From assembly GCA_963514005.1 (NCBI GenBank), contig OY740808.1, positions 12,710,001 through 12,774,000 of the forward strand: a stretch of 64,000 nt of DNA, read 5' to 3'. Of this stretch, positions 403 through 53,501 are shown piece by piece. Under the pieces are notes generated by a model, which saw only the letters and a program-made list of their open reading frames with translations, was not told the DNA's origin and ran no database searches. Position numbers and translations under genes: made by a program. Positions within the stretch are counted from its first letter, which is position 1. Each line of letters begins with the position of its first letter. The stretch comes from Raja brachyura. Lineage: Eukaryota.

Positions 403-620
403 AGACACTTAAAGCTGGAGTAACTTAGCGGGTCAGACAGCATCTGTGGAGAAAATGAATAGGTGACATTTCGGATCGAGACCCTTCTTCATACAGTCTG
501 AGGAAGGGTCTCGCCCCAAAACATCACAGATTCCTTTTCTCCAGAGATGCTTTCTGACCCGCTGAGTCCAGCTTTTTGTGTCTACCTTTGGTTTAAACCA
601 GCATCTGCAGCTCCTTCCTA
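403..620. repeat. Fold-back (palindromic) element made of two inverted Penelope pLTR/hammerhead-derived arms
   Basis: agacac...gctggagtaacttagcgggtcagacagcatct...gacatttcggatcgagacccttcttc (403-490) is the near reverse complement of gaagggtctcg...gatgctttctgacccgctgagtccagctttttgtgtct (~503-583); paralog at ~19652-19872. Confidence 0.8.
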
Positions 621-5204: not shown

Positions 5205-6216
5205 CTGTTGAACAAGAAGTAACGTTTAATTGGAGAATTGCTATCGTTGAGATATCATATTTCAGAAAATGCATCCCTTTAGAGCACTCACTTATTCATT
5301 TGTAGAAAATCGTTTTATTCTCGATCTTTTTCAAACAATTGGGTGTGTGTTTTTGTTAAAATCGGATGAACAATGAATAAACAACGTGAAAGCAACTAGG
5401 ATAGATGCTGTCTGTCCTATCCATAAACAACACGGAAACAACTGTGATATATCATGGCTGTAAAGTTTTATAAAATCGAACACATTAATATAACTTTATA
5501 AAAGTGATTTTCACTGCACGTCTCCAGCTTTAATTCCCTGTCCGTCTATTTAAATGTAACAGATGTGAATAATTTACTTCGCGGAATTTACAGATTAACA
5601 GATTGAAACGTATTTGATAGTGTGCACCCATTGAGATAGAGGGTGACGGTATTTAAGTACCGCAGGAATAGAAGGAAAATATTCCACGCACCGATTCGCA
5701 GATTTCGATTTCATTATAGTTCGAATGTTCATTTTTATTTGAAATGTATTGTTGCGTTCACCAAAGCCTGTTACACGCATTAAACAAAAGTAACCTATCT
5801 CCTGAGGAAAATGTGCCAACCGTTCTATTTTCACATTTTGAGGTGAAACGATATACCCGCTAGACATGTCAACCAGAATTTCGGCAAAGTTGAATGTCAA
5901 CGTTGCTGACCCCCGTTAACCAAGCAATTTACTTTCACATCTGGCCAATTATTCTCGCGAGTTGAAAAATTCGCTGCAAATACTTCTGCAAATTAGTTAA
6001 CAAACCGCATTCTACTCTAATATTGAGGGCGTAGGGCTCCAGTAGGGCTCTCTTTTCCAGTTATTTCACTGAGCTATGACCAAGTGAACTCGGAGCGTGA
6101 GCGTCTGTAAAGCAGGAATCTATACACTGCACCAACTACATCGAAATAAACCTGGCAAAATCAAGATAGGCACAAAACGCTGGAGTAACTTAGCGGATCT
6201 TTGGAGAAAAGGAATA

Positions 6217-6250
6217 GGCGACGTTTCGGGTCGAGACCCTTCTTCAGACT
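6217..6250 (-). ncRNA. Minimal type I hammerhead ribozyme motif
   Basis: Minus strand AGT-CTGAAGA-A-GGGTC(TC)GACCC-GAAA-CG-TC-GCC: CUGANGA core, stem II, GAAA, short palindromic stem III, GUC site. Confidence 0.75.
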
Positions 6251-12392: not shown

Positions 12393-13252
12393 CTGGTCCT
12401 AAAAAGGACCAGTTTAGTAAAAGTTGGAAAACTGCTTCAGAGATATTACGCTTTGCGATGATAAATTGGATATAATTATCAGAATGTCTCTATCAGCGGT
12501 GGATACTCGGAGTTTTCTTTCCAGGGCCGAAGTATTATATAATATAGTTTATAGCTTTAAAGTAGGAGAGGGGTGGAAGGGGGTACACTTTAAAGTTGAA
12601 GGGGGTACACTTTGCATGTATTTTTTAAACAGGAAGTGTGCAACGCTTTGCTAGAAGAAGCGGTGTAAGTAGATACCCAGCAAGGTTCACGAGGCATTTA
12701 GGCAAGCACGTGAACAGATAGGGAATGGAGGGATATAGACATTATATATGACAGGCAGGTGGCATTAGCGTAAATTGGCACTAGGTTCGCACAGACATCG
12801 TGGATAGATATGAAGTTATGACACTGACATCGTGTTTTACAGCATTTACGCGGATGATGAGCAAGAGAGACCGGCAGCATTTATGTGTGACATGAGTGCA
12901 TGGTTTTCTCGCCGGTTCTGGCGCTCACATATAGAAATCTTCGAAAGGCAACGCTAAATCAATGTAATTACATTACGACACAGGAGAAAATGCGGCCTTT
13001 TGGGTCAGTATCAGCTTCTGTCAGATGACCCCCCCCCCCCCCCCCCCGTCTTTATTATCTTGTAATTTTCAATTCATTCTCTCTCCTGCATATTTAACCT
13101 GTTTGATTCACTTTGCGATTTATCTTCACTAAGGGCATTAGAGCAATAGATAGGGATGGGAAATCGATGCAGTGTCTGGCCTACAATTAATGAATCCCCA
13201 AAATAAATCAATGGATAGGGATTAATTTAGCCGAAGAGCCATAAACCGACAA

Positions 13253-15008
13253 CAATGAATTGGAGGGAAGGGGGTATCACAGAGGGGGAGCAGTTAGAGA
13301 GGAGGTTGTGAAACTGTCTTCGTAGGGAGGAAGATAACTTCTTCAAAGTAGGCATACCTTGAGGAGATATCGCAGTGGAGTAGACAAAGTGTTAAAGAAG
13401 GAACTGCAGATGCTGGAGAATCGAGGGTTACACAAAAAGCTGGAGAAACTCAGCGGGTGCAGCAGCATCTAAGGAGCCCCCATTTCCTCCAAACACAAGG
13501 CGTAGCTATGGGCACACGCATGGGCCCTAGCTACGCCTGCCTCTTTGTCGGGCACGTCGAACAATCTTTGTTCTCGGCGTACCAGGGCCCCACCCCCGAC
13601 CTTTACCTCCGTTACATTGACAACTGCTTTGGTGTCACCTCCTGCACCCACGCACAACTGACTGACTTCATCCATTTCACCACCAACTTCCATCCGGCAC
13701 TCAAATATACTTGGACCATTTCCGACATTTCCCTACCATTCCTTGACCTCACCATCTCTATTGCAGGTGATACACTCCTGACTGACATCCACTACAAACC
13801 AACTGACTCCCACAGCTACCTGGACTACTCTTCCTCCCACCCTGCTTCCTGTAAGGACTCCATCCCCTATTCCCAATTCCTCCGTCTACGCCGCATCTGC
13901 TCCCAGGATGAGGTGTTCCACACCAGGTCATCATAAATGGCCTCGTTCTTCAGAGAACGGGGTTTCCCCTCCCCCACTATAGATGAGGCTCGCACCAGGG
14001 TCTCCTCCATACCCCGCAACACTGCCCTCTCTCCCCATTCCCCCACTCACAACAAGGGCCGAGTCCCCGTGGTCCTCACCTTTCACCCCACCAGCCAGCG
14101 CATACAACACATAGTCCTCCGCCAGTTTCGCCACCTCCAACGTGACCCCTCCACTCGCCACATCTTCCCATCTCCCCCCCCTGTCTGCGTTCCGCAAAGA
14201 CCGCTCCCTCCGCAACTCCCTTGTCAATTCTTCCCTTCCCTCCCGCTCCGCTCCTTCCCCGGGCACTTTCCCTTGCAACCGCAAGAGATGCTACACTTGT
14301 CCCTTCACCTCCCCCATCCACTCCTTTCAGGGACCCAAGCAGTCATTCCAAGTCTGACAGAGGTTCACCTGCTCCTCCTCCACCTCATCAACTGCATCCG
14401 TTGCTCAAGATGCCAGCTGATCTACATCGGTGAGACCAAGCGGAGGCTGGGCGATCGTTTCGCCGAACACCTCCGCTCGGTCCGCAATAACCAACCCGAC
14501 CTCCCGGTGGCTCAGCAGTTCAACTCCCCCTCCCATTCCGTATCCGACCTCTCGGTCCTGAGCCTCCTCCACGGCCAGAGTGAGCAACACCGCAAGTTGG
14601 AGGAACAGCACCTCATATTCCGCTTGGGGAGTCTGCATCCTCTGGGCATAAACATTGAATTTTCTCAATTCTGTTAACCCAGACTGCCCCCTCCCCACCT
14701 CTCCCTCAGCCCTCGGGCCCTGACATTCCTTCTCCATCTCTCCCCCCCCCCACCCCAGTCGCAGTAGCTTCTCATTTTCACACCACAAACAGCTTACAAT
14801 GGCCTGTTTCCTTTATCATCAATACTTTTTTGCATATCTTTCATTCATTGTTCTTTATCTCTCCACATCACTGTTTATATCTCTCGTTTCCCTGATCCCT
14901 GATCCCTGACCAGTCTGAAGAAGGGTCTCGACCCGAAACGTCGCCTATCTCCTTCGCTCCTTAGATGCTGCTGCACCCGCTGAGTTTCTCCAGCTTTTTG
15001 TGTAACCC
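13253..15008 (+). mobile_element. Penelope-like retroelement (RT + GIY-YIG) with inverted 5' segment and pLTR
   Basis: QTQGVAMGTRMGPSYACLF, RYIDN, LPFLDL, YKPTDSH; CQLIYIGETKRRLGDRFAEH; stop at 13934-13936 and a poly-C frameshift near 14175; 13425-13476 inverted against 14956-15008; 14-bp TSD CCATAAACCGACAA at 13239-13252/15009-15022. Confidence 0.95.
14912..14945 (+). ncRNA. Minimal hammerhead ribozyme motif in the Penelope pLTR
   Basis: AGT-CTGAAGA-A-GGGTCTCGACCC-GAAACGTC-GCC. Confidence 0.8.
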
Positions 15009-15032
15009 CCATAAACCGACAATGTTACTTAA

Positions 15033-15240
15033 CGTGTAGGAAGGAACTGCAGATGCTGGTTTAAATCGAAGATAGATACAAAATGCTCGAGTAACACAGC
15101 GGGACAGGTGGCATCTGTAGAGAGAAGGAATGGGTGACGTTTCGGGTCTGAAGAAAGGTCTCGACCGGAAAGATCACACATTCCTTCTGTCCGGAGATGC
15201 TGCCTGTCCCGCTAAGTCACTCCAGCATGTTGTATCTAGT
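15033..15240. repeat. Fold-back pLTR/hammerhead-derived element
   Basis: tagatacaaaatgctcgagtaacacagcgggacagg...gacgtttcggg | tctgaagaaaggtctcgacc...cctgtcccgctaagtcactccagcatgttgtatcta. Confidence 0.75.
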
Positions 15241-19222: not shown

Positions 19223-20001
19223 AATGATTCAGAACAAATGAGACCCGATATCGATGACCATGGAAAGGTGGAGCTCACAATGGACAACCAGGACACATGG
19301 GGAACGGGAGGAAAAGGCAAGGCCGGGAAGACTCAAATCTTTGCTGTTGGCTTCTTCATAAATATTACAAGCCGCAGAAGAAATTGGGAAGAAAATGGGC
19401 ATGATAATGGCAGCTCGAGAGTAATCGGAATTGGTTCCTTTGAACAGAGAAGGTATAATGGTGATTTGAATGCATAGTGAAGACGTTTAATTGACCAATT
19501 TGTTCCGAGTGAAAGTATGCCCAGTATTTACAAATTACAGATGAAGAGGAATTTCCAAAATAACTAACGATCAGGTGAGCAATTGCAGACATGTGACGAT
19601 TTATTCGAATCAGCAAAAAATGTCTACAATCCGGATTATTTAGAAACGATAAGACACATGAAGCTGGAGTAACTTAGCGGGTCAGACAGCATCTCTGGAG
19701 AAAATGAATAGGTGACATTTCGGATCGAGACCTTTTCTTCAAACATGCCGAAGAATGGTCTTGCCCCAAAACGTCACCGATTCCTTTTCTCCAGAGATGC
19801 TTTCTGACCCGCTGAGTTATTCCAGCTTTTTGTGTCTATCTTTGGTTTAAACCAGCATCTGCAACTCCTTCCAATTCATTAAGACCTAAGCCCAGGTTGC
19901 TCGTGTAACGTGAAAATAATTGGGAATAGGTCTTGGAATAAGTGAAAAGCGATTTGTGACAGAGGTCAGGGGTTTGTCCTCTTAGCATATAGTTCCCTCA
20001 T

Positions 20002-21606: not shown

Positions 21607-22414
21607 CTGTTTAACAAGAAGTCACGTTTAATTGGAGAATTGCTGTCGTTGGGATATCATATTTCAGAAAATGCATCCCATTACAGCACTCATTTATTCA
21701 TTTGTAGAAAATCGTTTTATTCTCGATCTATTTCAAACAATTGTGTGTGTGTTTTTGTTTAAATCGGATAAACAATGAATAAACAACGTGAAAGCAACTA
21801 GGATAGATGCTGTCTGTCCTATCCATAAACTCCACGGAAACAACTGTGATAGATCATGGCTGTAAAGTTTTATAAAATCGAACACATTAATATAACTTTA
21901 TAAAAGTGATTTTCACTGCACGTCTCCAGCTTTACTTCCATGTCCGTCTATTGAAATGTAATCGCCACGGTCACCGATTCGCACATTTCGATTTCATTAT
22001 AGTTCGAATGTTAATTTATATTTGAAATGTATTGTTGCGTTCGCCAAAGCCTATTACACAAAAGTAATGAGGAAAATGTGCGAAACGTTCTCTTTTCACA
22101 TTTTTAGGTGAAACGATATACCCGTTAGACATGTCAACCAGAATTTCGGCAAAGTTGAATGTCAACGTTGCTGCCCCCCGTTAACCAAGCAATTTACTTT
22201 CACATTTGGACAATTATTCTCGCGAGTTGAAAGTTTCGCTGCGACTACTTCTGCAAATTATTTAACAAACCGCATTTCATGCCACGATAGTTCGGGGGCA
22301 CTTCAATTCTACGCCAATCCTTATATACATGCCTACTTCAAAATCCCCCCAAAAGTGCCAATAGTTCGCATTGGGAAACACGCGATAATTATTGGGCGGG
22401 AAGGAATAATTGGA

Positions 22415-22550
22415 GGGTTACACAGAAAGCTGGAGAAACTCAGCGGGTGCAGCAGCATCTAAGGGGCGAAGGAGATAGGCGAAGTTTCGGGTCGAGACCC
22501 TTCTTCAGACTCCTACTTTGAAGAAGTTCTCCTCCTATCTCCTTCGGTCT
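22415..22550 (-). mobile_element. Short Penelope pLTR insertion with hammerhead variant in the cluster 2 J-C intron
   Basis: gggttacacagaaagctggagaaactcagcggg...cccttcttcagact; possible imperfect TSD GAATAATT(G/T)GA at 22404-22414/22551-22561. Confidence 0.75.
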
Positions 22551-23041
22551 GAATAATTTGAAATGGCTTTGAGATAGAAATGTGGCTCTCATCTGCGAAA
22601 CAACGACATACATTATTTCCGTGATTCAACAAAAGTATAAAGGGATTCAGAGTGAAATACTTGTTTCAATATCAAACAAAACACCGTGGAACAAATTATT
22701 CTCTCGCATCCCTGCACCGTGCGGTCAGATATCAATGTGTACAAAAGATTAAAAGTAACTGCAGTCCCAAATAATTTATTTCGCCCAAAGTAGATAAGGT
22801 CCATGTGTTCATTCGTGCGCTTAGGTTCATTGGGCGCTGAGTTGAGAAATGGATTTTTAGCTCCCTTTTCGAGTTAATTCACTGAGCTATGACCAAGTGA
22901 ACTCGGAGCGTGAGCGTCTGTAAAGCAGGAATCTATACACTGCACCAACTACATCGTAATATACCTGGGAAAATCAAGTATAATGTGAGGATAGGCAAAA
23001 AACGCTGGAGTAACTTAGCGAATCTCTGGAGAAAAGGAATA

Positions 23042-23075
23042 GGTGACGTTTCGGGTCGAGACCCTTCTTCAGACT
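23042..23075 (-). ncRNA. Minimal hammerhead ribozyme motif
   Basis: Minus strand AGTCTGAAGAAGGGTCTCGACCCGAAACGTCACC. Confidence 0.75.
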
Positions 23076-23427
23076 GAGTCAGGCGAAAGGGACGCGAAAG
23101 ATATAGATGGAGATATAGAGAGATAAAGAAAAAACTGATTTAAAGATATGCAAAAAAGTAACAATGATAAAGGAAATAGGCCGTGGTGAAAACGAGTTAC
23201 AGACAATGCAGCTCACCTGGAAAACATTGAAACTATTACAACGACTAACTTCAAAGTTACTTTAAGTTAGAGAAATCAATAGTCATACCGCTGGATTGTA
23301 AGGTGGCCAAGTGAAATATGAGCTGCTGTTCATCCAATTGCTTGAATTGCGACGTTCATTCAACAAACATTTCATTTACATTTACAAATTAATCCACGGT
23401 GCCGTCCACAGAATATATTTCACTTAC

Positions 23428-23919
23428 CACCAATACCCAGCCTCGTTTCTTTACCGAAATGTAAACCACTATCCCATCTTGCACAGTCTGCAGCATCGAC
23501 CGCTTGAACGTTAGATATTGCGAATGTTGCAGTGTTGCCTGACATTGAGACGGAGTGTCCGTGCCTTTATAAATGCTGCCGGAAGAATAGTAGAATAAAT
23601 ATTTTGGAGTTTTGCCAGGGATCTGTTGGTACCAGGAGTCATAGTTACCGCCTGAACTGTCGCCCGTTATGGTGCAGGTTATTTGTATGTTCTGCCCCGT
23701 AGAGGTGGACAGCAAAGGCGGTTGACTTATTGTAATTGCCGCATTTACATCTGAGAAAAGATCAAGATCAGAAAAATATAAAATCATTAAGATAGTTGAA
23801 GTGTGGGAGAAGATCCCAATTAAATGGTGCACGGAAATAAATCTATTGTCCGTGGAAGAATAATATTCACAAACTGCGCTTAACACCAACGCACCAACCA
23901 CACAGATCCAGCAAGACAT
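23428..23919 (-). pseudogene. IGLV: IgL cluster 2 leader (23871-23919) + germline-joined VJ (23428-23750) pseudogene
   Basis: VJ exon 323 vs 342 nt: 13-nt frameshifting deletion at 23555/23556 and 6-nt deletion near 23487 removing YY of DYYC; J reads FGKET. Confidence 0.93.
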
Positions 23920-23987
23920 TTTAATTAAGCTACTCAACTCCGATAGGGCGTCAGTTTCCTGATTAAGTGGCGTCTAAACTTGCTCTC

Positions 23988-24583: not shown

Positions 24584-26661
24584 TCCTCCAGATCCCGTTG
24601 TACTTCCCCTTTTCCCAACTTGACACCATTTAGATAATAATCGGCCTTCCTGTTTTTGCTACCAAAGTGGACAACCTCACATTTATCCACATTAAACTGG
24701 ATCTGCCATACATCTGCCCACTCACCCAACCTGTCTAAGTCATGCTGCATTCTCATAGCATCCTCCTCACACTGCCACCCACCTTTGCGTCATCTGCAAA
24801 TTTGTTAATGTTACTTTGAATCCCTTCATCCAAATTATTGATGTATATTGTAAATAGTTGCGGTCCCAGCACCGAGCCTTGCGGTACCCCACAAGTCACT
24901 ACCCGCCATTCTGAAAGGGACCCGTTAATCCCTACTCTTTGTTTCCTGTCTGCCAAACAATTTTATATCCATGTCAGCACTCTACCCCCAATAAAATGTG
25001 CCCTAATTTTGCCCACTAATCTCCAAGTCGGACCTTGTCAAATGCTTTCTAAAAGTCCAGGTACACTACATCCACTGGCTCTCCCTTGTCCATTTTCCTA
25101 GTTACATTCTAAAAAATTTCCAGAAGATTAGTCCAGCATGATTTTCTCTTCGTAAATCCATGCTGACTCGGACTGATCCTGTTACTGCTATCCAAATGAG
25201 CCGCTATTTCATATTTTATCATTGACTCCAGCATCTTCCCCACCACCGATGTCAGGCTAACTGGTCTATAATTCCCTGGGGGTTACACAAAAAGCTGGAG
25301 AAACTCAGCGGGTGCAGCAGCATCTAAGGAGCGAAGGAGATAGGCGACGTTTCGGGTCGAGACCCTTCTTCAGCTTTTGCTGGGGTCCGAACTGGGAGGC
25401 AGGGAATTGGAGCTGGAATCCACGAGGTATGAGGTGGAGGCGCAGGCAGGCCCCGAGGAAGCAGATGTGGCTGTGGTATCGAGTCTGGGTGAGGATGTGG
25501 TCGTAGAGTTGGAGGGAAGGGGGTATCACAGAGGGGGAGCAGTTAGAGAGGAGGTTGTGAAACTGTCTTCGTAGGGAGGAGGAGAACTTCTTCAAAGTAG
25601 GCATACCTTGAGGAGATATCGCAGTGGAGTAGACAAAGTGTTAAAGAAGGAACTGCAGATGCTGGAGAATCGAGGGTTACACAAAAAGCTGGAGAAACTC
25701 AGCGGGTGCAGCAGCATCTAAGGAGCGAAGGAGATAGGCGACGTTTCGGGTCGAGACCCTTCTTCAGCTATAATTCCCTGGATTCTCTCTCCCACTTTCT
25801 TAAGAGCTACCCTATAATCCACAGGAACGGATCCTGAAATCTATAGAAGATTGGAAAATGATCACCAATGACCACAGTTTCTGGAGCCATTTCCTTAAGT
25901 ACCCTGGGATGCAGAGCATCAGGCCCTGGAGATTAGTCAGCCTTCAGTCCCATCAGTCTACCCAACACCATTTCCCGCCTAATGTGGATTTCCTTCGGTT
26001 CGTCTGTCACCCCAGATCCTCTGGCCACTCGTACATCAGGAAGAATGTTTGTGTCCTCCTTATTGAAGACGGATCCAAAGTACCTATTCAACTCATCTGC
26101 CTTTTCCTTGTTCCCCATAATAAAATCACTTTTTTTTCAGTCGTCAAGGGTCCAACTTTCGTTTTAACTATTTTTTTCCTCTTCACGTACCTTAAGAAGC
26201 TTTTACTATCCTCCTTCATATTCTTGGCTAGCTTACCTTCATTCCTCATCTTTTCTCCGCGTATTGCCTTTTTAGTTATCTTCTGTTGCTCTTTAAACAT
26301 TACCCAATCCTCTTGCTTACCACTCAACTTTGCTACGTTGTACTTCTTCTCTTTTATTTTTATACTTTCCCTGACTTCCCTCATCAGCCTCGGTTGCCCC
26401 TTACTCCCCATGGAATCTTTCTTCCTCTTTGGAATGAACTGATTCTGCACCTTCTGTATTATTCCCAGAAATACCTGCCATTGTTGTTCCACTGTCATCC
26501 CTGCTAGGGTATCCTTCCAGACAACTTTGGCCAGCTCCTCCATCATGGTTCCATAGCCCCCTTTGTTCAACTGTAACACTGACACCTCCGATTTATCCTC
26601 CTCCTTCTCAAATTGTATATTAAAACTTGCCATATTATGGTCACTACCTCCTAATGGCTCA
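24584..26661 (-). mobile_element. Decayed CR1 ORF2, host of the nested Penelope-derived insert
   Basis: ORFs 26088-26633, 25933-26118, 24753-24956 (GVPQGSVLGPQLF, KFADD) and 24514-24756. Confidence 0.9.
25280..25767 (-). mobile_element. Non-autonomous Penelope-derived unit flanked by 94-bp direct repeats, each carrying a hammerhead motif (retrozyme-like)
   Basis: Repeats 25280-25373 and 25674-25767 (period 394); interior matches the Penelope 5' region at 13260-13424; 14-bp TSD CTATAATTCCCTGG at 25266-25279/25768-25781. Confidence 0.88.
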
Positions 26662-34364: not shown

Positions 34365-34565
34365 TATTTGAAGATAGACTTAAAAAGCTGGACAGACAGT
34401 ATCTCTGGAGAAAAGTAGTAGGCGGCGTTTCGGGTCCGAAGGGTCTCGACCCGAAACATCATCTATTCATTTTATCCAGAGATGCTGTCTGACCCGAATG
34501 AACCACTGCAACGTTTTTATGTCTAGCTTCGGTTTAAACCGGCATCTGCAGTTCCTTCCTACACA
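34365..34565. repeat. Fold-back pLTR/hammerhead-derived element
   Basis: gaagatagac...cagacagtatctctggagaaaa...cgtttcgggtc | gacccgaaac...tccagagatgctgtctg...gtcta; paralog ~52630-52810. Confidence 0.72.
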
Positions 34566-35863
34566 CTACGTATTTCTTTAATCTGCAACCGGGCAGTGTA
34601 TTTCAATTGGGCTGCAGAAGATTCTCTGAGAGATTCGAAGAAAGAGAAGAGAACTCATTGAACATAAATGCTTATTGTGAGAGGGATGAACAAGAGAACG
34701 CTGGTTTCGGGGACAATATAGTGCTGGATCTGGCTATGTAGGGGTGAAATAAAGTGGAATGTCTTCGCGAAGAAGGTTGTAAATCATTGGAATCCTCTCT
34801 GTTGGGTGGCTTTGAATGTCCCGTCATTGGAACAATTCATATCTGATCGTCTGATATTGATGGATAGTTGGACACTAGAGGAACAGATGGAAATGCCAAG
34901 ACTAGGAAGATTCAATCTTTGCTGTTTGCTCCCTCAAAAAAAAAACACAACCCACAGCGGGGATTGTGATGGAACATGGCATGTCAACGACAGCTGAAGC
35001 GTAATTGAAATACACATCCCGTCATCGGTTAATGTCAATGTCTTCGGTGATAAAGGATGGAGGTGCGGTGCTTAGTGTGGATAGTGTAAAGTGGAGGTGG
35101 GAACAAACCATCAGTTTTAAAGAATCTTGCTGATATGTTGGGAATTAATGTCGTTTCCGGTAAATTTCCAGGTATGCACATATCTTGCCTTTATTTACAG
35201 TATGTAACGGTGCGCCTTACGAACGGAAACATATTTAACAAATACTTTAAACCATGAAGGTGTGGGGTTGGTAGGGACATTTTTGACCAAAAGAACAACC
35301 TGAAACATCAAACCAATTTCTTACTGCAGGCCGCCTCGCCGAGAATTTTCTGCCAATTTTGTGCATTCTTATTGGAGTTGAGATCACGTTTGTCATGATT
35401 GGTTTAGAACGCATTGTATAACTTGGCGAGTGGCACAAACTCACTACTGTTCTGCGATTGTAATTCGAGATCGAGATTGAGGGAAAATAAATAAGCGTTT
35501 CTTGCTCAAAGATACAAGAGAACACAATCCATATTAAGTCGTCATGTTTGGGGTCACAAATAAATCAAGGAGAATCAGCGATGCATTTGACAATAGTTGT
35601 AAAACTTTACTCAATGGCTGCAAATAATAACCTGGGTACAATAGCAACATACATTATTTTAGTTAATACAATTGAATCGACGTGATGCTTTATTCAAGAA
35701 CGATATTCTTTCGAAAGAACTACATTTAAAGCGATGTCATACAAATCAAGGTTTCAAGTGGCATTTCTTTATGAAAATTCCGTAAGACAAAGATTAACTT
35801 TGTCACATGGAAGAAACCAATGGTGATTAACTAACTTTGGGGAGTCAGCTCGCGCTTCAAACA

Positions 35864-46590: not shown

Positions 46591-46591
46591 G

Positions 46592-47030
46592 GGTAGACAA
46601 AAATGGTGGAGGAACTCAGCGGGTGAGGCAGCATCTATGGAGCGAAGGAAATGGGCGACGTTTCGGGTCGAGACCCTTCATCAGACTGATGTGAGGGTGG
46701 GGGGGGCGGGAAGAAGAAGTAAGAGGCCGAGACAGTGGGCTGGGGGAGAGCTGGGAAGGGGAGGAGAATTCCGGGATTACCTGAAGTTGAAGAATTCAAT
46801 ATTCATACCGCTGGGGTGTAAACTGTCGAAACGAAATATGAGGTGCTGCACCTCCAATTTATGGTGGGCCTCACACTGACCATGGAAGAGGCCCAGGACA
46901 GAAAGGTCGGATTTGGAATGGGAGGAGGAGTTGAAGTGCTGAGCCACTGGGAGATCAGGTTGTTTATTGCGAACTGAGTGGAGGTGTTGTGCGAAGCGAT
47001 CGCCAAACCTGCACTTGGTCTCACCGAGGT
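46592..47030 (-). mobile_element. Penelope 3' fragment (GIY-YIG end + pLTR)
   Basis: GETKCRFGDRFAQHL...PVAQHFNS...KLEVQHLIFR in ORF 46777-47097. Confidence 0.88.
46654..46687 (-). ncRNA. Minimal hammerhead ribozyme motif (canonical CUGAUGA core)
   Basis: Minus strand AGTCTGATGAAGGGTCTCGACCCGAAACGTCGCC. Confidence 0.8.
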
Positions 47031-49249
47031 TCATCATACACTGAATAATCCAACCACATTTTTGGTTGGAAATTGAAAGAAATAGTAGAAATTGCATTCA
47101 TTGCAACATGAAAAAGAGTTGAGATACTGCATTATAATTTTGCTGCATGTCATTGTGGTCTATATCATGTCTCGATTGGTGAATATGTTTCGTTTGTGAC
47201 TTTATTTGAAGCAGAAATAATTTGTGAATACTTCATTGAGCATAATTCCGACTGGTAACAGTGCACTTCGTCCGAGCACATTATCGCACACATCATGGAG
47301 CCGTCTTAAATGACCACCTAAACTGTCACTTGGCAACGTAAAAAGCTGCCAAGGTTGCCCGGCTGACAACAGAAAAAAAAATTAAGTGAGAACCCTGAAA
47401 GGTGTATAATATTTTTGACACTGTCATAGGCCTTTCTTACACATGCTGTCACAGCGCACTGTAGTCTCTCAACAACACTTCAGTAATTTTCCTTCCCCTC
47501 CATTTCAGAAAAATAATGTTTTAAGCCAATAACTCGACACTAGCACTGGTAATAAATAAATAAATAAACGCAGCTTTCCAGCCCTTTATTTCATTGGCCA
47601 CGCTCGGCTGCAAATCGGTGTCAATCTGGTGGACCATCTTCCTCAAGTCGTGGGGGTAGGGGATTGGGAGGGGCCTCACAAGTGGAACAGCTTAGGGCCT
47701 CTCTTCATCTAAATCCGGCCCTGGAAGGATACAAGGATGGGGGGGGGGGGGGGGGGGGGTTGCAAGAGTAGCTTGAAATTAGATAAATCAATAGTCATAC
47801 CACTGGGTTGAAAGTTGCCCAAGCGAAATATGAGTTGCTGTTCTTCCAATTTGCGTGTGGCCTCACTCTGACGATGACAGGACAGAATGGTCTGTACGGG
47901 AAAATAGATCAAAGAAAACCGGAGTAACTCAGCGGGACAGGCAGCATCTCTGGATAGAAGGAATGGGTGATGTTTCGTGTCGAGACCATTCTTCAATGGG
48001 AGGGAAAATGTTTCGGCAATCAGAATATCCCGTAGGCCATGGCGGACTATGCATAAGCGTTCAGCGAAACGACCACCTAGTTCATAGTTCCTCTTGCCAA
48101 TCTATAGGAGCCCGCACCGAACAATAGATGAGGTGGAGAAGGTGCAAGTAAACTTCTGCCTCCCCTGAAACGACTGTCGGGGTCCCTGGATATAGTCGAG
48201 GTGGGAGGTATAAGGACAGGATTGCTTCTTCTGCGGTTGCAAGGAGAAGTTCCTGGGGAGAGGGTGGTTTTGGTGGGAACTGATGAATGAACCAGAGAGT
48301 TTCAGAGGGAATCTTCACTGCGGAACACAGAAGGGGGGGTGGGGGGAGTTGTGACCAGTTTGGAGGTCAAGAACATTTAGGAGGATAATAACTGTCCCTA
48401 TCGCGACTGTGGGGCTTGGGAACAAGTGCGGAACTGGTGGATCAAATTGCGACACGTGTGATGGTCTAATTTATGATAAAAGGGCGGAACTATAGTTTCC
48501 TAAAGAATTAGGATATATCTGATGTTCTAGTCTGGAACATCTCATCTTGGGAGAAAAATCAGCGCCGTCAGAGGAATTGGTAGTAGGGAATAGGGTATTT
48601 TGAAAGTGGCAGGGTAGGAAGAAGTGTGGGCCGGATAACATGAACACCTAACAACTCCATGCCATTTCCACGGTGAGTTTACTGTCCTGGACCGCTCAAA
48701 ATGAGCCCACGCGCATATTGGACTAATAGCACCTCATATTTCGTTTGCGCAGCTTACAACACAGCGGTATGAACATTGATTTCTTCAACTTGAAGTACTG
48801 CTTCATTCCCCCCCCCCATCCCACCCGCCGCCCCCCCCCCCCCCCCTCCCCCCGTACATGAGGGCGGGAAAGAAAATAAGATATAGAGCGCGGTCAGATT
48901 GGATGAGAAAGGAAGGTGAGAGGGAAAACGGTGTAGGAATTGGAATGGGCACCGTTGAGTTTAAAGCGGTGAGGGTGATATAAAGTACAGAAATAAAAAA
49001 ATGCATGGAGAAGACAGGAACAATAAAACCAAAACACACTCCTTTTCAGATCACAGATGCCCATGCACCCAAGTAATTGCACAATGTTAATTATTATTTT
49101 ACTATCAGCGCATAACCTTGCAAATTATTAAATTGATAACAAATGGGATGTGGTAGATAAAAATACTTAAATCATTTTATGTGAATAAAAGTGTCGAAAC
49201 AGCCAAACAAATTTGAAAGAGCAAGGCAAACAGATAGGTAATGTATGGG

Positions 49250-49410
49250 CCGCATCTATGGAGCGAAGGAATGGGTAACGTTTCGGGCCGAGACCCTTCA
49301 TCAGACTGACCTCGAAACGTTAACCATTCCTTCGCTCCATAGGTGCTGCCTCACCCGCTGAGATTCTCCATATTCTGCCTTCGATTTTTCCAGCGTCTGC
49401 AGTTATCTCT
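49250..49410. repeat. Fold-back pLTR element with a CUGAUGA hammerhead on the minus strand
   Basis: gcatctatggagcgaaggaatgggtaacgtttcg...cccttcatcagact / cgaaacgttaaccattccttcgctccataggtgc. Confidence 0.72.
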
Positions 49411-51204
49411 TTAAACGATAGGTAATGTCTACTTTAGTTACAATTATAAAAATGTCAGGAATAAAAACTGAAAACAGGTCAGCTAACGTCATGGAAAGAA
49501 AACAAATTCAGCTGGCACCCGGAGATAGAGAGAAAAACTATTTGGTTTTCAGTGCCAGAAAAGGTTGGAAGGGGGTGGACGGGGAGATGTCGAGAACACA
49601 GTTCCTCTGATAGATTTTAACTGGGTGAACTAGCCACTTGCACGTACATTACCGTATATTTAACTGCCGATCTATTTTCTTGTTAATGGAGATGCAAAGG
49701 AACATGTTCTGCGGTACGGACTAAAAGTATAGAATAAAGAAAAAGGGGCCAAATAATGACGGACAGAAATGACCAGCTCTGATAGAAGCTGAAGAAACGA
49801 CTGGTTAGTCTAAAATTAGGAAACTTGATTCCGAATCGGGATAGCTGCAACTCGTTACAAGTTCACGTTCACTAGTTATAGGAGTAGAATTAGGCCGTTC
49901 GGACAATCGAGTCGACTGCGCACTCAACCATGGCTGATCTAAGCCCCCTGGTCTCATTTTCCTGCCTTCTCCCCATAACCCTTGAAACAGTTCTAATCAA
50001 GAATTTGTCTATCTCTACTGATCCACATCAAAAATATCATAAGAAGCCGCACAGAAAGGCCGAAATTGAAGCTCCGGATTCAATTTACGGACTGGGTACG
50101 GATGCTCCATTAAGCAATGCATGTTTATTTCCTCGTATGTAAAGGAATGTGTACCGTGAACACAACACTGGAAGGGTCTTACGAACCCTGAACGGTAAGA
50201 CGACGGTAAGAGGTGAAAGCACAGGCGTATAATTCAATTGCAAGGGTAATTGGAGAGGCAGGGCTCCATTTCGTCCTCAGCTTTTCTTCTGAGCATTGTA
50301 GTTACCCTCCATGAGCGGACGCTTCATGGCAGCGAGCAATCGCGCTTCATGTACCTGCCCCTACTGAAGAATACCACTCATCCTGCACCTCTCCTCAAAA
50401 ATCAAATTTCAAGAACACAGCACACTTTGAAAATTGGGGATCACAAGCAAGGCAGGCTTTGATGACTAAAAATCACAGGTGATGCTTGTATAGAGCCTCG
50501 CGCAGATTATGGAAACTGACGTTGGGAGGTCAATACCTCGAACATGGCATGAAAAACAATTTCTGCTAACCAACAACAGCAATCGACTGATTCTTGAACA
50601 TGTCGCTCATTAATGTAACCTGGCGAATCAACGGACAAGGTTGCAAATGCGCTGTACTTGAGACCGCCCAAAAAGATTGGCACCAGAAGTGAAGGTTTGT
50701 AAGCATTGGTTCACAGGCCAACACTAAAAGTATCCACGTTGTGATCAGTTGCTCAACGTTGTTGGGAGCTGTATGTGAGTAATGGATGGCAGGGTTGGTC
50801 ATTTGGTGTCCATATCCTTGGCGTACAGATCCAAGACCAAACTGCTGAAACGAGCACTCTACTCTGAGCTCCATTGTGCAATGATATTGGGAGGACAGAA
50901 TAAATGTTTCAAGGGCATTTTGAACCCGGCAAGCAGCGGCTAGCAGGCCCGTCTCGCCGGCCGTGAACCGTCCTCGGAGGACCCGACCAGTAAACCCGCC
51001 GGGGTCTCCGGTGGGTTCGAGCGCCGACCGAGAGGCTCAACGGTGTCCGCCCGAAATCTCGCGGTCAGCGGGAGCCTGCCCGAAGGCTCGATGATCGACG
51101 GGCATCCAGGAACCGCCCGAAGGCTCGGCGGACGGCATAACCGGGAGGGAACAGGAGACGTCGGAAGCGAAGGGCAAAGACCAGTAGGAGGGTGAAGCGG
51201 AGTA

Positions 51205-52382: not shown

Positions 52383-53501
52383 TGAGGGGACTATATATTA
52401 AGAACAGCATGGATTTGAAATTGGAGCTAAATCTGGCGACACTATATACTGTCTCAGTGTACCTCCACTATACAATTTTACTGCATCTGAGATGTTTATC
52501 TAAGATGTATTTAAGCGCTTATGTATAGTGATACTTGTACTGAACTGTAAACAAAAAATAGTTACACTGTACCCTGGTAGATGAGAATAACGCACCATCG
52601 AACCATTCATAAAAACTCTATGTATTTCTTTAGACATAAAATGCTGGTCAGAGTACATCTCTGGATAAAATGAATAGGTGACGTTTCGGGTCTGAAGAAG
52701 CTTCGTCAGCTATTCCTTTAATCCAGAGATGCTGTCTGACCCGAATTAATTACTCCAACTTTTAATGTCAATCTTCGGTTTAATCTGGCACCTGCAGTTC
52801 CTTCCTACACACTACGTGTTTCTTTAATCGGCAACCGGACAGCGTATTTCAATTGGGCTGCAGAGGATTATCGGAGAGTTTCGGAGAAAGAGAGGAGAAC
52901 TAATTGGAAATTAAATGCTTATTGTTAGAGGGATGAACAAGAGAACCCTGGATATGTTGGATCTACAGTGGGCACTTAATATCATGCTGGGTCTGACTAT
53001 GTAGGGGTGAGATAAAGTGGAATGTCTACGGGGAGAATGTTGTAAATCATTGGAATCCTCTTTGTTGGGCGGGTTTGAATGTCGCGTCATTGTAACAATT
53101 CATATCTGATCGTCTGATATTGATGGATAGTTGGACACTAGAGGAAAAGATGGAAGTGCCAAGACTAGGAAGATTCGATCTTTGCTGTTTGCTCCCTCAG
53201 ATAAAAAATACAACCCACAGCGGGGATTGTGATGGAACACTGCATGATAACGACAGATTAAGCTTAATTGGAATACAAATCTCGTCATCTGTTAATGTCA
53301 ATGTCTTCGGTGAAAAAGGATGGAGGTGCGGTGCATAGTGTGGATAGTGTGAAGCAGAGGTGGGAACAAACTGTGAGTTTTACAGAAACTTGCTGATATG
53401 TTGGGAATGAATGTCGTTTCCGTTAAATTTCCAGGTATGCACATATCTTGCCTTTATTTACAGTATGTACGGTATATACAGCCTTACGAACGAAAACATA
53501 T

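What the first reader, a model, noticed from the sequence alone, without database searches (positions are those of the whole stretch)
25266..25781. Retrozyme-like 394-nt unit bounded by two hammerhead ribozymes, inserted with a perfect 14-bp TSD
Seen: two apparently identical 94-bp direct repeats 394 nt apart. On the minus strand each begins exactly at CTGAAGA and continues A-GGGTCTCGACCC-GAAACGTC. The interior is only the Penelope 5' UTR and ORF start (no RT or endonuclease), and the insert sits in a CR1 between CTATAATTCCCTGG duplications. Established: Penelope pLTRs carry minimal type I hammerheads whose palindromic stem III works best as a tandem dimer, and hammerhead-flanked non-autonomous units (retrozymes) produce small circular RNAs. 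Inference: this is a recent non-autonomous unit that could self-excise as a ~394-nt RNA and be mobilised by the matching autonomous family at 13253-15008.
Basis: partly seen in the sequence, partly recalled or inferred. Interest (0 to 1): 0.82.

Follow-up and report, generated by a model that had tools for sequence, protein, structure and literature searches.

The report
Truncated Penelope retrotransposon copy with terminal repeats
This is a young, gutted copy of a Penelope-like retrotransposon (terminal repeat, start of the gene, terminal repeat) inserted into an old LINE in a cartilaginous-fish genome; its two hammerhead-like motifs are incomplete, so it is an ordinary by-product of how these elements copy themselves rather than a shown self-cutting circular-RNA element.

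Summary
Two identical 96-nt direct repeats lie 394 nt apart, flanked by a perfect 14-bp target-site duplication, inside a degenerate LINE reverse-transcriptase gene. The sense strand is minus.

The insert reads: 94-nt pseudo-LTR (pLTR), 69-nt 5'UTR, first ~230 nt of the Penelope-like element (PLE) ORF, 94-nt pLTR. It has no RT or endonuclease.

Each pLTR starts with a hammerhead core (CUGAAGA, helix II, GAAAC, GUC) of the minimal PLE type. Both copies lack the helix I 5' strand: 0 bp, against 2 bp in family copies that keep CAGU upstream. Helix III cannot form in cis. No Rfam hammerhead model matches. The 394-nt RNA is C-rich and folds no better than shuffles.

Contigs of related runs show the pLTR plus a 28-35-nt tail is about 100 times more abundant than the interior. 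They also show many head-to-tail and fold-back joints that all use the same 5' end at CTGAAGA. That end is 28 nt upstream of the hammerhead cleavage site.

Best reading: a single-event partial-tandem mini-PLE made by template switching or re-initiation of the PLE RT. Whether this junction recurs in the genome could not be resolved.

The scan has many earlier notes on Penelope/hammerhead repeats in this genome. The link between retrozymes and PLEs is already published.

The parts
25266..25279 (.). Left copy of the 14-bp target-site duplication (CTATAATTCCCTGG on +)
   Evidence: family D2, 100%. Uninterrupted paralogous LINE copies run straight on past 25278 (loose ends).
25280..25373 (-). 3' pLTR, 94 nt. 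In sense it reads CTGAAGA...GTGTAACCC. It ends at the family's first reverse-transcription start site, with no tail.
   Evidence: It is 100% identical to the 3' end of the truncated PLE at 14915-15008.
25346..25373 (-). Hammerhead-like core of the 3' pLTR: CUGAAGA, extra A, helix II GGGU/ACCC, GAAAC, GUC. Predicted cleavage lies between 25346 and 25345. There is no helix I 5' strand; the upstream sequence is ...CAAAAG.
   Evidence: No Rfam match.
25374..25604 (-). First ~230 nt of the PLE ORF (ATG at 25604). It is cut at about codon 76-77 and joined directly to the 3' pLTR. The junction lies within 25373-25376.
   Evidence: the N-terminal homology to shark ORFs ends at residue ~75-76.
25305..25604 (-). 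Chimeric 99-aa ORF: 77 genuine N-terminal residues, then read-through into the pLTR
   Evidence: The exact protein is not in the 15-billion-protein collection, and no relative of similar length was found.
25605..25673 (-). 5'UTR between pLTR and ATG (69 nt). Its first 28-35 nt (25639/25646-25673) correspond to the family's 'tail'.
   Evidence: depth steps, joints to 25638-25648, loose ends before 25638 and 25672. (tailed copies in the window).
25674..25767 (-). 5' pLTR, 94 nt, identical to the 3' pLTR. It begins exactly at CTGAAGA.
25740..25767 (-). Hammerhead-like core of the 5' pLTR. The upstream sequence is target DNA (...UUAUAG), so there is no helix I 5' strand.
25768..25781 (.). Right copy of the 14-bp target-site duplication
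13239..15022 (+). Matching-family PLE insertion. TSD CCATAAACCGACAA lies at 13239-13252 and 15009-15022. An inverted 5' fragment lies at 13257-13477 (pLTR nt ~44-94, the 5'UTR and ORF +1..+99). A 5'-truncated RT/GIY-YIG body with an in-frame stop lies at 13478-14677. A 237-nt 3'UTR follows, then the 94-nt pLTR at 14915-15008.
   Evidence: GIY-YIG E 0.024, below cut-off; nearest Atlas clusters are GIY-YIG, score 0.97

Best explanation
The locus is one insertion event of a young Penelope-like element (PLE) family. It delivered a partial-tandem 'mini' copy: pLTR (94 nt), 5'UTR (69 nt), first ~230 nt of the ORF, pLTR (94 nt). It landed in an AT-containing site of an old LINE and made a 14-bp TSD.

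Inferred mechanism: the PLE reverse transcriptase started at its normal internal start site at the end of the pLTR and copied the pLTR to the 5' end of the RNA, which begins at or next to CUGAAGA. It then switched or re-initiated at an internal site about 230 nt into the ORF, on the same or a sister RNA, and copied to the 5' end again.

An equally workable variant is that it copied a transcript of an existing tandem locus that already had this junction.

The hammerhead cores come along as part of the pLTR. In this copy both are truncated at C3 and have no helix I, so self-excision of a 394-nt RNA is unlikely. The copy keeps the pLTR-ORF junction region that in vitro work on another PLE identified as the template and RT-binding part. 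It is therefore best described as a non-autonomous mini-PLE, not an established retrozyme.
For: Shown:
- Perfect 96-nt repeats and a 14-bp TSD.
- The matching family copy also has a 14-bp TSD and carries the same pLTR at its 3' end.
- The interior is the true ORF start.
- Contigs of three runs give pLTR word depth of about 11-16 million. The ORF part gives about 0.09-0.16 million.
- One search also shows many head-to-tail joints from 25373 (the CTGAAGA end) to 25638-25648 (the tail end). Rarer joints go to 25673, 25579 and 25496.
- One search shows strand-changing joints that carry 'ACT' after ...CTTCAG. So the sense 5' end (AGT)CTGAAGA is the constant partner in a range of junctions whose other side varies.
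- AT-rich loose ends before 25672 and 25638 mark two 3' boundaries about 34 nt apart.
- A second chimeric insertion of the same family sits at 22413-22550.
- Fold-back dimers occur at 405-617, 15040-15233, 19654-19871, 34397-34567 and 49249-49414.
- Helix I count: 0 bp in both unit cores, 2 bp in copies with CAGT upstream.
- No Rfam hammerhead match.
- No unusual RNA structure.

From the literature:
- PLEs insert as partial tandems with pLTRs, inverted 5' fragments and a 30-40-bp tail (PMC8557442).
- A PLE RT initiates internally at two adjacent sites and needs the first 172 nt of the ORF. The hammerhead is not needed for insertion in vitro (PMC11167929).
Against: - The copy number of this exact junction in the genome could not be measured. 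A family with this junction is therefore not excluded.
- The template-switch step is inferred from junction anatomy and was not observed.
- Most joints in the reads show AGT before CTGAAGA, but both pLTRs here start at C without the T. The reason is unexplained.
- The TSS/initiator reading of TCAGTCT comes from my own knowledge and is untested.
- Minimal PLE hammerheads can be protein-assisted, so weak cleavage cannot be ruled out from sequence alone.
Confidence: 0.62

Rival explanations
1. Retrozyme-like non-autonomous element. A 394-nt unit family is transcribed as multimers, cut by its two hammerheads, circularised, and copied by the PLE RT going round the circle. That gives more-than-unit insertions such as this 1.24-mer.
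For: - Two hammerhead cores lie in direct orientation 394 nt apart.
- The size is within the 170-400 nt range of animal retrozyme RNAs (PMC7229834).
- The unit keeps the region that a PLE RT binds. On a circle the start site at the pLTR end would again have that region downstream of it.
- Published proposals exist that retrozymes are PLE derivatives, and that circular PLE RNAs explain partial tandems.
- The unit was inserted intact with a TSD.
Against: - Both cores lack helix I, and would lack it in any multimer because the upstream sequence is ...CAAAAG.
- There is no helix III in cis and no Rfam match.
- The unit boundaries are at CTGAAGA, not at the cleavage site.
- The RNA is 38% C, 43% paired, with z -0.03 to -0.6. 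Published retrozyme circles are 'highly self-paired' and low in GC.
- TRF does not call a tandem.
- The interior is about 100 times rarer than the pLTR.
- Unchecked notes from other windows report other spacings (203, 290 nt). That suggests variable one-off junctions.
Confidence: 0.17
2. A full-length pLTR-ORF-pLTR insertion that later lost about 2.5-3 kb by an internal deletion, from ORF +230 to the start of the 3' pLTR.
For: PLE full-length copies have this outline. The AG at the junction could be a 2-nt microhomology.
Against: The deletion end would have to fall by chance exactly on the pLTR/CTGAAGA boundary. That is the same point used by hundreds of independent joints in the reads. The repeats and TSD carry no mutation, which leaves little time for a second event.
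Confidence: 0.07
3. Two separate events: a solo pLTR insertion, followed by a second insertion of pLTR plus 5' region next to it.
For: Solo pLTRs are extremely abundant. PLE endonucleases are reported to cut within their own sequences.
Against: A single perfect 14-bp TSD brackets the whole unit, and there is no second TSD. The two pLTRs are identical, including the unusual start without AGT.
Confidence: 0.04
4. Assembly artefact in a highly repeated sequence.
For: The pLTR is present at very high copy number, which can mislead assemblers.
Against: The structure is coherent: TSD, ordered 5'UTR and ORF start, and a continuous host LINE reading frame across the empty site. The laid contigs come mostly from low-coverage runs and neither confirm nor contradict it.
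Confidence: 0.03

Closest known systems
Penelope-like elements (EN+ PLEs, Penelope/Poseidon/Neptune type) and their partial-tandem insertions with pseudo-LTRs
   Same: - Direct terminal repeats produced by more-than-unit copying.
- A minimal hammerhead core inside the pLTR.
- Two 3' boundaries about 30-35 nt apart (the 'tail').
- Inverted 5'-truncated fragments next to copies.
- AT-containing targets.
- A GIY-YIG endonuclease downstream of the RT in the matching copy.
   Different: The body between the pLTRs is reduced to the 5'UTR plus about 77 codons. Both pLTRs begin exactly at C3 of the hammerhead core, without the AGT that most family copies show.
Minimal type I hammerhead motifs of metazoan PLEs (Cervera and De la Pena 2014, PMC4209133)
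   Same: - CUGANGA, GAAA and GUC boxes.
[quoted passage not shown]
- The G10.1-C11.1 pair.
- A palindromic ACGU in place of helix III, implying action as a dimer.
   Different: The published motifs have a 4-5 bp helix I (2 bp in D. virilis). This family has 2 bp, and the two copies in the unit have none.
Animal non-LTR retrozymes (Cervera and De la Pena 2020, PMC7229834; Li et al. 2026 preprint, 10.64898/2026.07.22.740005)
   Same: Non-autonomous, PLE-related, with hammerhead motifs in direct orientation a few hundred nt apart. TSDs are longer than 4 bp.
   Different: Only 1.24 units rather than a tandem array. The hammerheads are incomplete rather than canonical. GC is 53.8% and the RNA is not self-paired. 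It contains a piece of coding sequence. No RNA evidence exists.
Non-autonomous PLE derivatives with pLTRs (e.g. MRC1 and other Chlamys derivatives in Chlamydomonas; Craig et al. 2021, PMC8557442)
   Same: Short elements that keep the termini of an autonomous PLE family and form pLTRs and head-to-tail insertions.
   Different: Those are multi-copy families similar to the autonomous element at the 3' end. Here the retained part is the 5' region, and family status is unproven.
In vitro minimal template of the Anolis PLE PAc (Frangieh et al. 2024, PMC11167929)
   Same: The retained region (pLTR-ORF junction plus the first ~230 nt of the ORF) covers the equivalent of the part needed for RT binding and internal initiation (first 172 nt of the ORF). 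There are two start sites with a tail between them.
   Different: It is a different PLE family. In PAc the hammerhead overlaps the start codon and the start sites lie inside the ORF, whereas here they lie upstream of the ATG. No biochemical test was done here.

Membership tests
Penelope-like element (EN+) | RT followed by a C-terminal GIY-YIG endonuclease in one ORF | tested here: inconclusive
   The unit has neither domain. The matching copy at 13478-14677 has RT-like motifs visible by eye. It has a GIY-YIG match at E 0.024, 15.4 bits, below Pfam's 22.6 cut-off. Its nearest Atlas clusters are eukaryotic GIY-YIG proteins at 0.96-0.97. No Pfam RT hit was obtained on the fragment.
Penelope-like element (EN+) | Pseudo-LTRs: direct terminal repeats from partial-tandem copying, flanked by a TSD | tested here: met
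   repeats 100% identical, 14-bp TSD
Penelope-like element (EN+) | Optional 30-40-bp tail / two adjacent reverse-transcription start sites | tested here: met
   Met at family level. Loose ends before 25672 and 25638, and joints to 25638-25648. Tailed copies occur in the window. This copy ends at the first site, without a tail.
Penelope-like element (EN+) | Inverted 5'-truncated copies adjoining insertions | tested here: met
   13257-13477 and several fold-back dimers in the window. Strand-changing joints in contigs.
Hammerhead ribozyme (minimal type I, PLE variant) | Conserved core C3-A9, G12-A14, A15.1-U16.1, H17 | tested here: met
   CUGAAGA ... GAAAC GUC at 25767-25740 and 25373-25346
Hammerhead ribozyme (minimal type I, PLE variant) | Helix II with G10.1-C11.1, a bulged nucleotide after A9, and palindromic 15.2-16.2 | tested here: met
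   A + GGGU(CUCG)ACCC; ACGU. Features as listed in PMC4209133.
Hammerhead ribozyme (minimal type I, PLE variant) | Helix I between the strand 5' of C3 and the strand 3' of the cleavage site (4-5 bp; 2 bp in the weakest published case) | tested here: not met
   0 contiguous pairs for both cores of the unit. 2 pairs for family copies preceded by CAGT.
Hammerhead ribozyme (minimal type I, PLE variant) | Match to a curated hammerhead covariance model | tested here: not met
   No hammerhead family at gathering score or at E<=10. The Rfam models require helix III, so minimal motifs are expected to fail this test.
Hammerhead ribozyme (minimal type I, PLE variant) | Self-cleavage after H17 | not testable with these tools
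   Needs in vitro transcription or RNA 5'-end mapping
Animal non-LTR retrozyme | Tandem array with at least two consecutive units, each with a complete hammerhead | tested here: not met
   1.24 units. TRF reports nothing. The hammerheads are incomplete.
Animal non-LTR retrozyme | Low GC (<45-50%) and a highly self-paired unit RNA | tested here: not met
   GC 53.8%, C 38%, 43% paired. z -0.03 for the linear form and -0.6 for the circular form.
Animal non-LTR retrozyme | Expressed as linear and circular RNA of unit length | not testable with these tools
   The runs labelled 'RNA?' were guesses and behaved like DNA. Only contigs were available, and the one raw-read run held 2 reads.
Animal non-LTR retrozyme | Multi-copy family sharing the unit | tested here: inconclusive
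   The junction is unique in the window and absent from JGI metagenome contigs. The chimeric ORF is absent from the protein collections. The genome itself could not be searched.

The most novel reading that the evidence does not exclude
The unit, together with the genome-wide head-to-tail joints, may show how hammerhead-bearing tandem arrays (animal 'retrozymes') arise from PLEs without any circular RNA. After reaching the 5' end of its template, the PLE RT re-initiates at one of its internal start sites and adds one more unit per round. Re-initiating at the tail gives 122-nt units, and re-initiating deeper in the ORF start gives 200-400-nt units such as this one. This copy would be a newborn unit that still carries the RT-binding ORF start.
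Probability: 0.15. Interest if true: 0.6.

Novelty: new member of a known kind. Interest (0 to 1): 0.3.

Why it matters
If the junction proves to be multi-copy or the RNA circular, this would be a vertebrate retrozyme caught close to its origin from a PLE, a link so far argued mainly from phylogeny.

As it stands, the locus is a clean natural example of PLE integration. It shows a fixed 5' end at the hammerhead core, internal start sites, and template switching. It also shows that the hammerhead cleavage site plays no visible part in defining the copy's boundaries. That agrees with the in vitro finding that the ribozyme is dispensable for insertion.

Tried and rejected
- Rfam at gathering score over the whole window, and at E<=10 over 25200-25850 and 14860-15030, gave no hammerhead. 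The only hits were chance lncRNA/snoRNA matches.
- Exact look-up of the 99-aa chimeric ORF found nothing in the collection. The word-based protein search found no candidate. Both are uninformative, because short ORFs of this genome may not be in those collections.
- The junction 31-mer was absent from JGI metagenome contigs. That collection is not expected to hold this genome.
- Read laying gave only Logan contigs of low-coverage runs. The raw-read run X23 held 2 reads and is not this organism. No listed contig bridges the junction, so neither its copy number nor any RNA evidence was obtained.
- Pfam on the RT fragment and on the N-terminal ORF returned nothing. An Atlas search with the N-terminal part gave only low scores.
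- I looked for a long-range helix I (upstream CAGCAAAAG against downstream UGCUG or CUUUUUG). I rejected it because the partners lie 25-55 nt from the cleavage site.
- Post-insertion deletion, two-step insertion and assembly error were considered and given low weight. The reasons are set out under rival explanations.
Full report
**1. The observation**

Searches confirm the anatomy.
- 25280-25375 and 25674-25769 are 100% identical over 96 nt, with start-to-start spacing of 394.
- CTATAATTCCCTGG occurs at 25266-25279 and again at 25768-25781.
- On the minus strand each repeat starts CTGAAGA-A-GGGTCTCGACCC-GAAAC-GTC and ends GTGTAACCC.
- The element part of the repeat is 94 nt. The two extra matching letters (AG in sense) are part of the TSD at the 5' end and part of the ORF remnant at the internal junction.
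- A 14-nt perfect duplication that exactly brackets a 96-nt perfect repeat cannot be chance.

**2. What the parts are**

The interior.
- The minus strand is the sense strand.
- After the 5' pLTR (25767-25674) come 69 nt of 5'UTR, then an ATG at 25604.
- The ORF runs 99 codons, but only the first ~75-77 are genuine.
- A full HMMER scan with residues 1-77 found 48 proteins. The best are shark proteins from Hemiscyllium, Chiloscyllium, Stegostoma and Rhincodon, at 53-56% identity. Their own residues 1-75 align with the query, and they then continue for hundreds of residues.
- In the window's ORF the homology stops at FGPQQ(K). The rest is read-through into the 3' pLTR.
- So the interior is the true start of a conserved ORF, cut after about 230 nt and joined directly to CTGAAGA.

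The link to a Penelope-like element comes from the second insertion of the same family.
- It sits at 13239-15022 and is bracketed by its own 14-bp TSD, CCATAAACCGACAA.
- At 13257-13477 it holds an inverted fragment that is 98.6% identical to the unit. The fragment covers pLTR nt ~44-94, the 5'UTR and ORF +1..+99.
- It then holds a plus-sense 5'-truncated body with RT-like motifs, an in-frame stop at 13934-13936, and a GIY-YIG motif.
- A 237-nt 3'UTR follows, then the same 94-nt pLTR at 14915-15008, 100% identical.
- The GIY-YIG assignment rests on a sub-threshold Pfam hit (E 0.024) and on nearest Atlas clusters that are animal GIY-YIG proteins (0.96-0.97).
- That copy is therefore of the matching family, but it is not itself autonomous.

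The host sequence is a degenerate LINE RT. With the insert removed in memory, the minus-strand frames read ...NYRPVSLTSVVGK......VDVVYLDF.KAFDKV... and ...GVPQGSVLGPQLF...FADD..., and the TSD encodes PGNYR. Contigs from other runs continue past 25278 with the sequence that follows the insert here. These are uninterrupted paralogues.

**3. The hammerhead motifs**

The core fits the minimal PLE hammerhead of Cervera and De la Pena (PMC4209133).
- It has the CUGANGA, GAAA and GUC boxes.
- It has a G10.1-C11.1 pair.
- It has a palindromic ACGU in place of helix III, so only a dimer could form helix III.

Helix I is the problem.
- Family copies in the window that keep their 3'UTR have (T)CAGT before CTGAAGA. 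They can form two core-proximal pairs (U2.1 with G or A at 1.1; G2.2 with C1.2).
- Both cores of the unit are preceded by ...TATAG and ...CAAAAG and form none.
- The same would hold in any multimer or circle of the unit, because the upstream neighbour of the core is always ...CAAAAG.

No Rfam hammerhead model matches, even at E<=10, in the unit or in the parent context. This is expected for motifs without helix III and is weak evidence on its own.

The predicted 394-nt product (25739-25346, minus) shows no special structure.
- It is 53.8% GC and 38% C.
- It folds to -72.2 kcal/mol, against -72.0 +/- 5.1 for shuffles (z -0.03).
- As a circle it is 43% paired, with z -0.6.
- Published animal retrozyme RNAs are described as highly self-paired and low in GC (PMC7229834).

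**4. What the reads add**

Only Logan contigs of low-coverage runs from several coded organisms hold parts of the stretch. The single raw-read run gave 2 reads.

Depth in X1 (summed word depth):

| Region | Depth |
|---|---|
| Both pLTRs | about 11-16 million |
| First ~25 nt after the pLTR | about 10 million |
| 25622-25650 | 5.8 million |
| 25535-25621 | 0.6-1.1 million |
| ORF part, 25390-25534 | 0.09-0.16 million |

The pLTR plus a short tail is thus about 100 times more abundant than the interior.

Joints.
- Dozens of contigs join 25373 (the CTGAAGA end) to 25638-25648. These are head-to-tail arrays of pLTR plus a 26-36-nt tail.
- Fewer contigs join 25373 to 25673, 25579 or 25496.
- Other contigs carry ACT (with or without one or two further letters) after ...CTTCAG and then change strand to about 25339. 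These are fold-back dimers like those in the window.

Loose ends with AT-rich flanks sit before 25672 and before 25638. These mark two 3' boundaries about 34 nt apart.

This matches published PLE behaviour:
- partial tandems, inverted 5' fragments and a 30-40-bp tail (PMC8557442);
- internal initiation of reverse transcription at two adjacent sites, dependence on the first 172 nt of the ORF, and preference for AT-rich targets (PMC11167929).

**5. Mechanism**

In all these junction types the constant partner is the sense 5' end at (AGT)CTGAAGA. That end is 28 nt upstream of the hammerhead cleavage site. The variable partner is a 3' boundary.

[quoted passage not shown] TCAGTCT resembles an initiator element (my own knowledge), and a transcription start inside the pLTR is known for Penelope. 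After reaching that end, the RT continues on a new template position.

For this locus the simplest path has three steps:
1. Initiation at the pLTR end.
2. Copying of 94 nt to the 5' end.
3. Re-initiation or a jump to ORF +~230 on the same or a sister RNA, followed by copying to the 5' end again.

Both pLTRs start at C, without the usual AGT. This fits one RNA being copied twice. It would also fit a transcript from an older tandem locus.

A second chimeric insertion of the family lies at 22413-22550. It comprises antisense pLTR nt 31-42, antisense ORF +4..+25, AGT and a full pLTR, with TSD AATTATTC. It shows that multiple template switches are routine for this family.

Unchecked notes from other windows of this genome report double-hammerhead units with spacings of 203 and 290 nt. 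If true, those also point to variable junctions.

**6. What could not be settled**

- The junction-spanning ORF is not in the protein collections.
- The junction is unique in the window.
- It is absent from metagenome contigs.
- No listed contig bridges it.
- No true RNA data were available, so expression, 5' ends and circles remain untested.

**7. Comparison and verdict**

The locus is a member of a known kind: a PLE partial-tandem insertion, here reduced to a mini-copy that keeps the pLTR and the RT-binding 5' region.
- It resembles animal retrozymes in outline.
- It fails the retrozyme features that could be tested: a tandem array of at least 2 units, complete or canonical hammerheads, and a low-GC, self-paired RNA.
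- The idea that retrozymes derive from and are mobilised by PLEs is already published (PMC7229834; preprint 10.64898/2026.07.22.740005).
- The scan had already flagged many Penelope/hammerhead repeats in this genome.
- Interest is modest. The most novel reading still open is that iterative re-initiation by the PLE RT, rather than circular RNA, seeds such arrays.

Noticed in passing
window 22413-22550 (minus sense): Chimeric insertion of the same PLE family. It comprises an antisense piece of the pLTR (nt 31-42), an antisense piece of the ORF start (+4..+25), AGT and a full 94-nt pLTR (96.9% identical), flanked by AATTATTC on both sides. This is evidence of several template switches in one event.
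   Followed up: partly
window 405-617, 15040-15233, 19654-19871, 34397-34567, 49249-49414, 52674-52813: Head-to-head (fold-back) dimers of older pLTR families (71-83% identical to the unit). The hammerhead core region lies at the centre, and some arms carry a ~32-nt tail.
   Followed up: partly
window 6171-6247 and 22996-23072 (minus): Solo pLTR copies with intact hammerhead core and CAGT upstream. I confirmed only the motif.
   Followed up: partly
window 23389-23937 (minus): This ORF contains an immunoglobulin V-like stretch (...ITCTITGDSSGGNYDSWYQQIPGKTPKYL...). The window therefore seems to lie in an antibody gene cluster of a cartilaginous fish.
   Followed up: no
window 46591-48800 (minus): Another, more diverged PLE copy. 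GIY-YIG-region matches lie at 46783-47088 and 47775-48449, with pLTRs at 46591-46684 and 47915-47995.
   Followed up: no
window 13934-13936: An in-frame TAA splits the RT/EN reading frame of the family copy. Its RT catalytic motif reads YIDN rather than YxDD.
   Followed up: no
joints 25373 to 25638-25648: Head-to-tail arrays of about 122-nt units (pLTR plus tail) are common in contigs of several related organisms. These short arrays look more like published vertebrate retrozymes than the 394-nt unit does.
   Followed up: no
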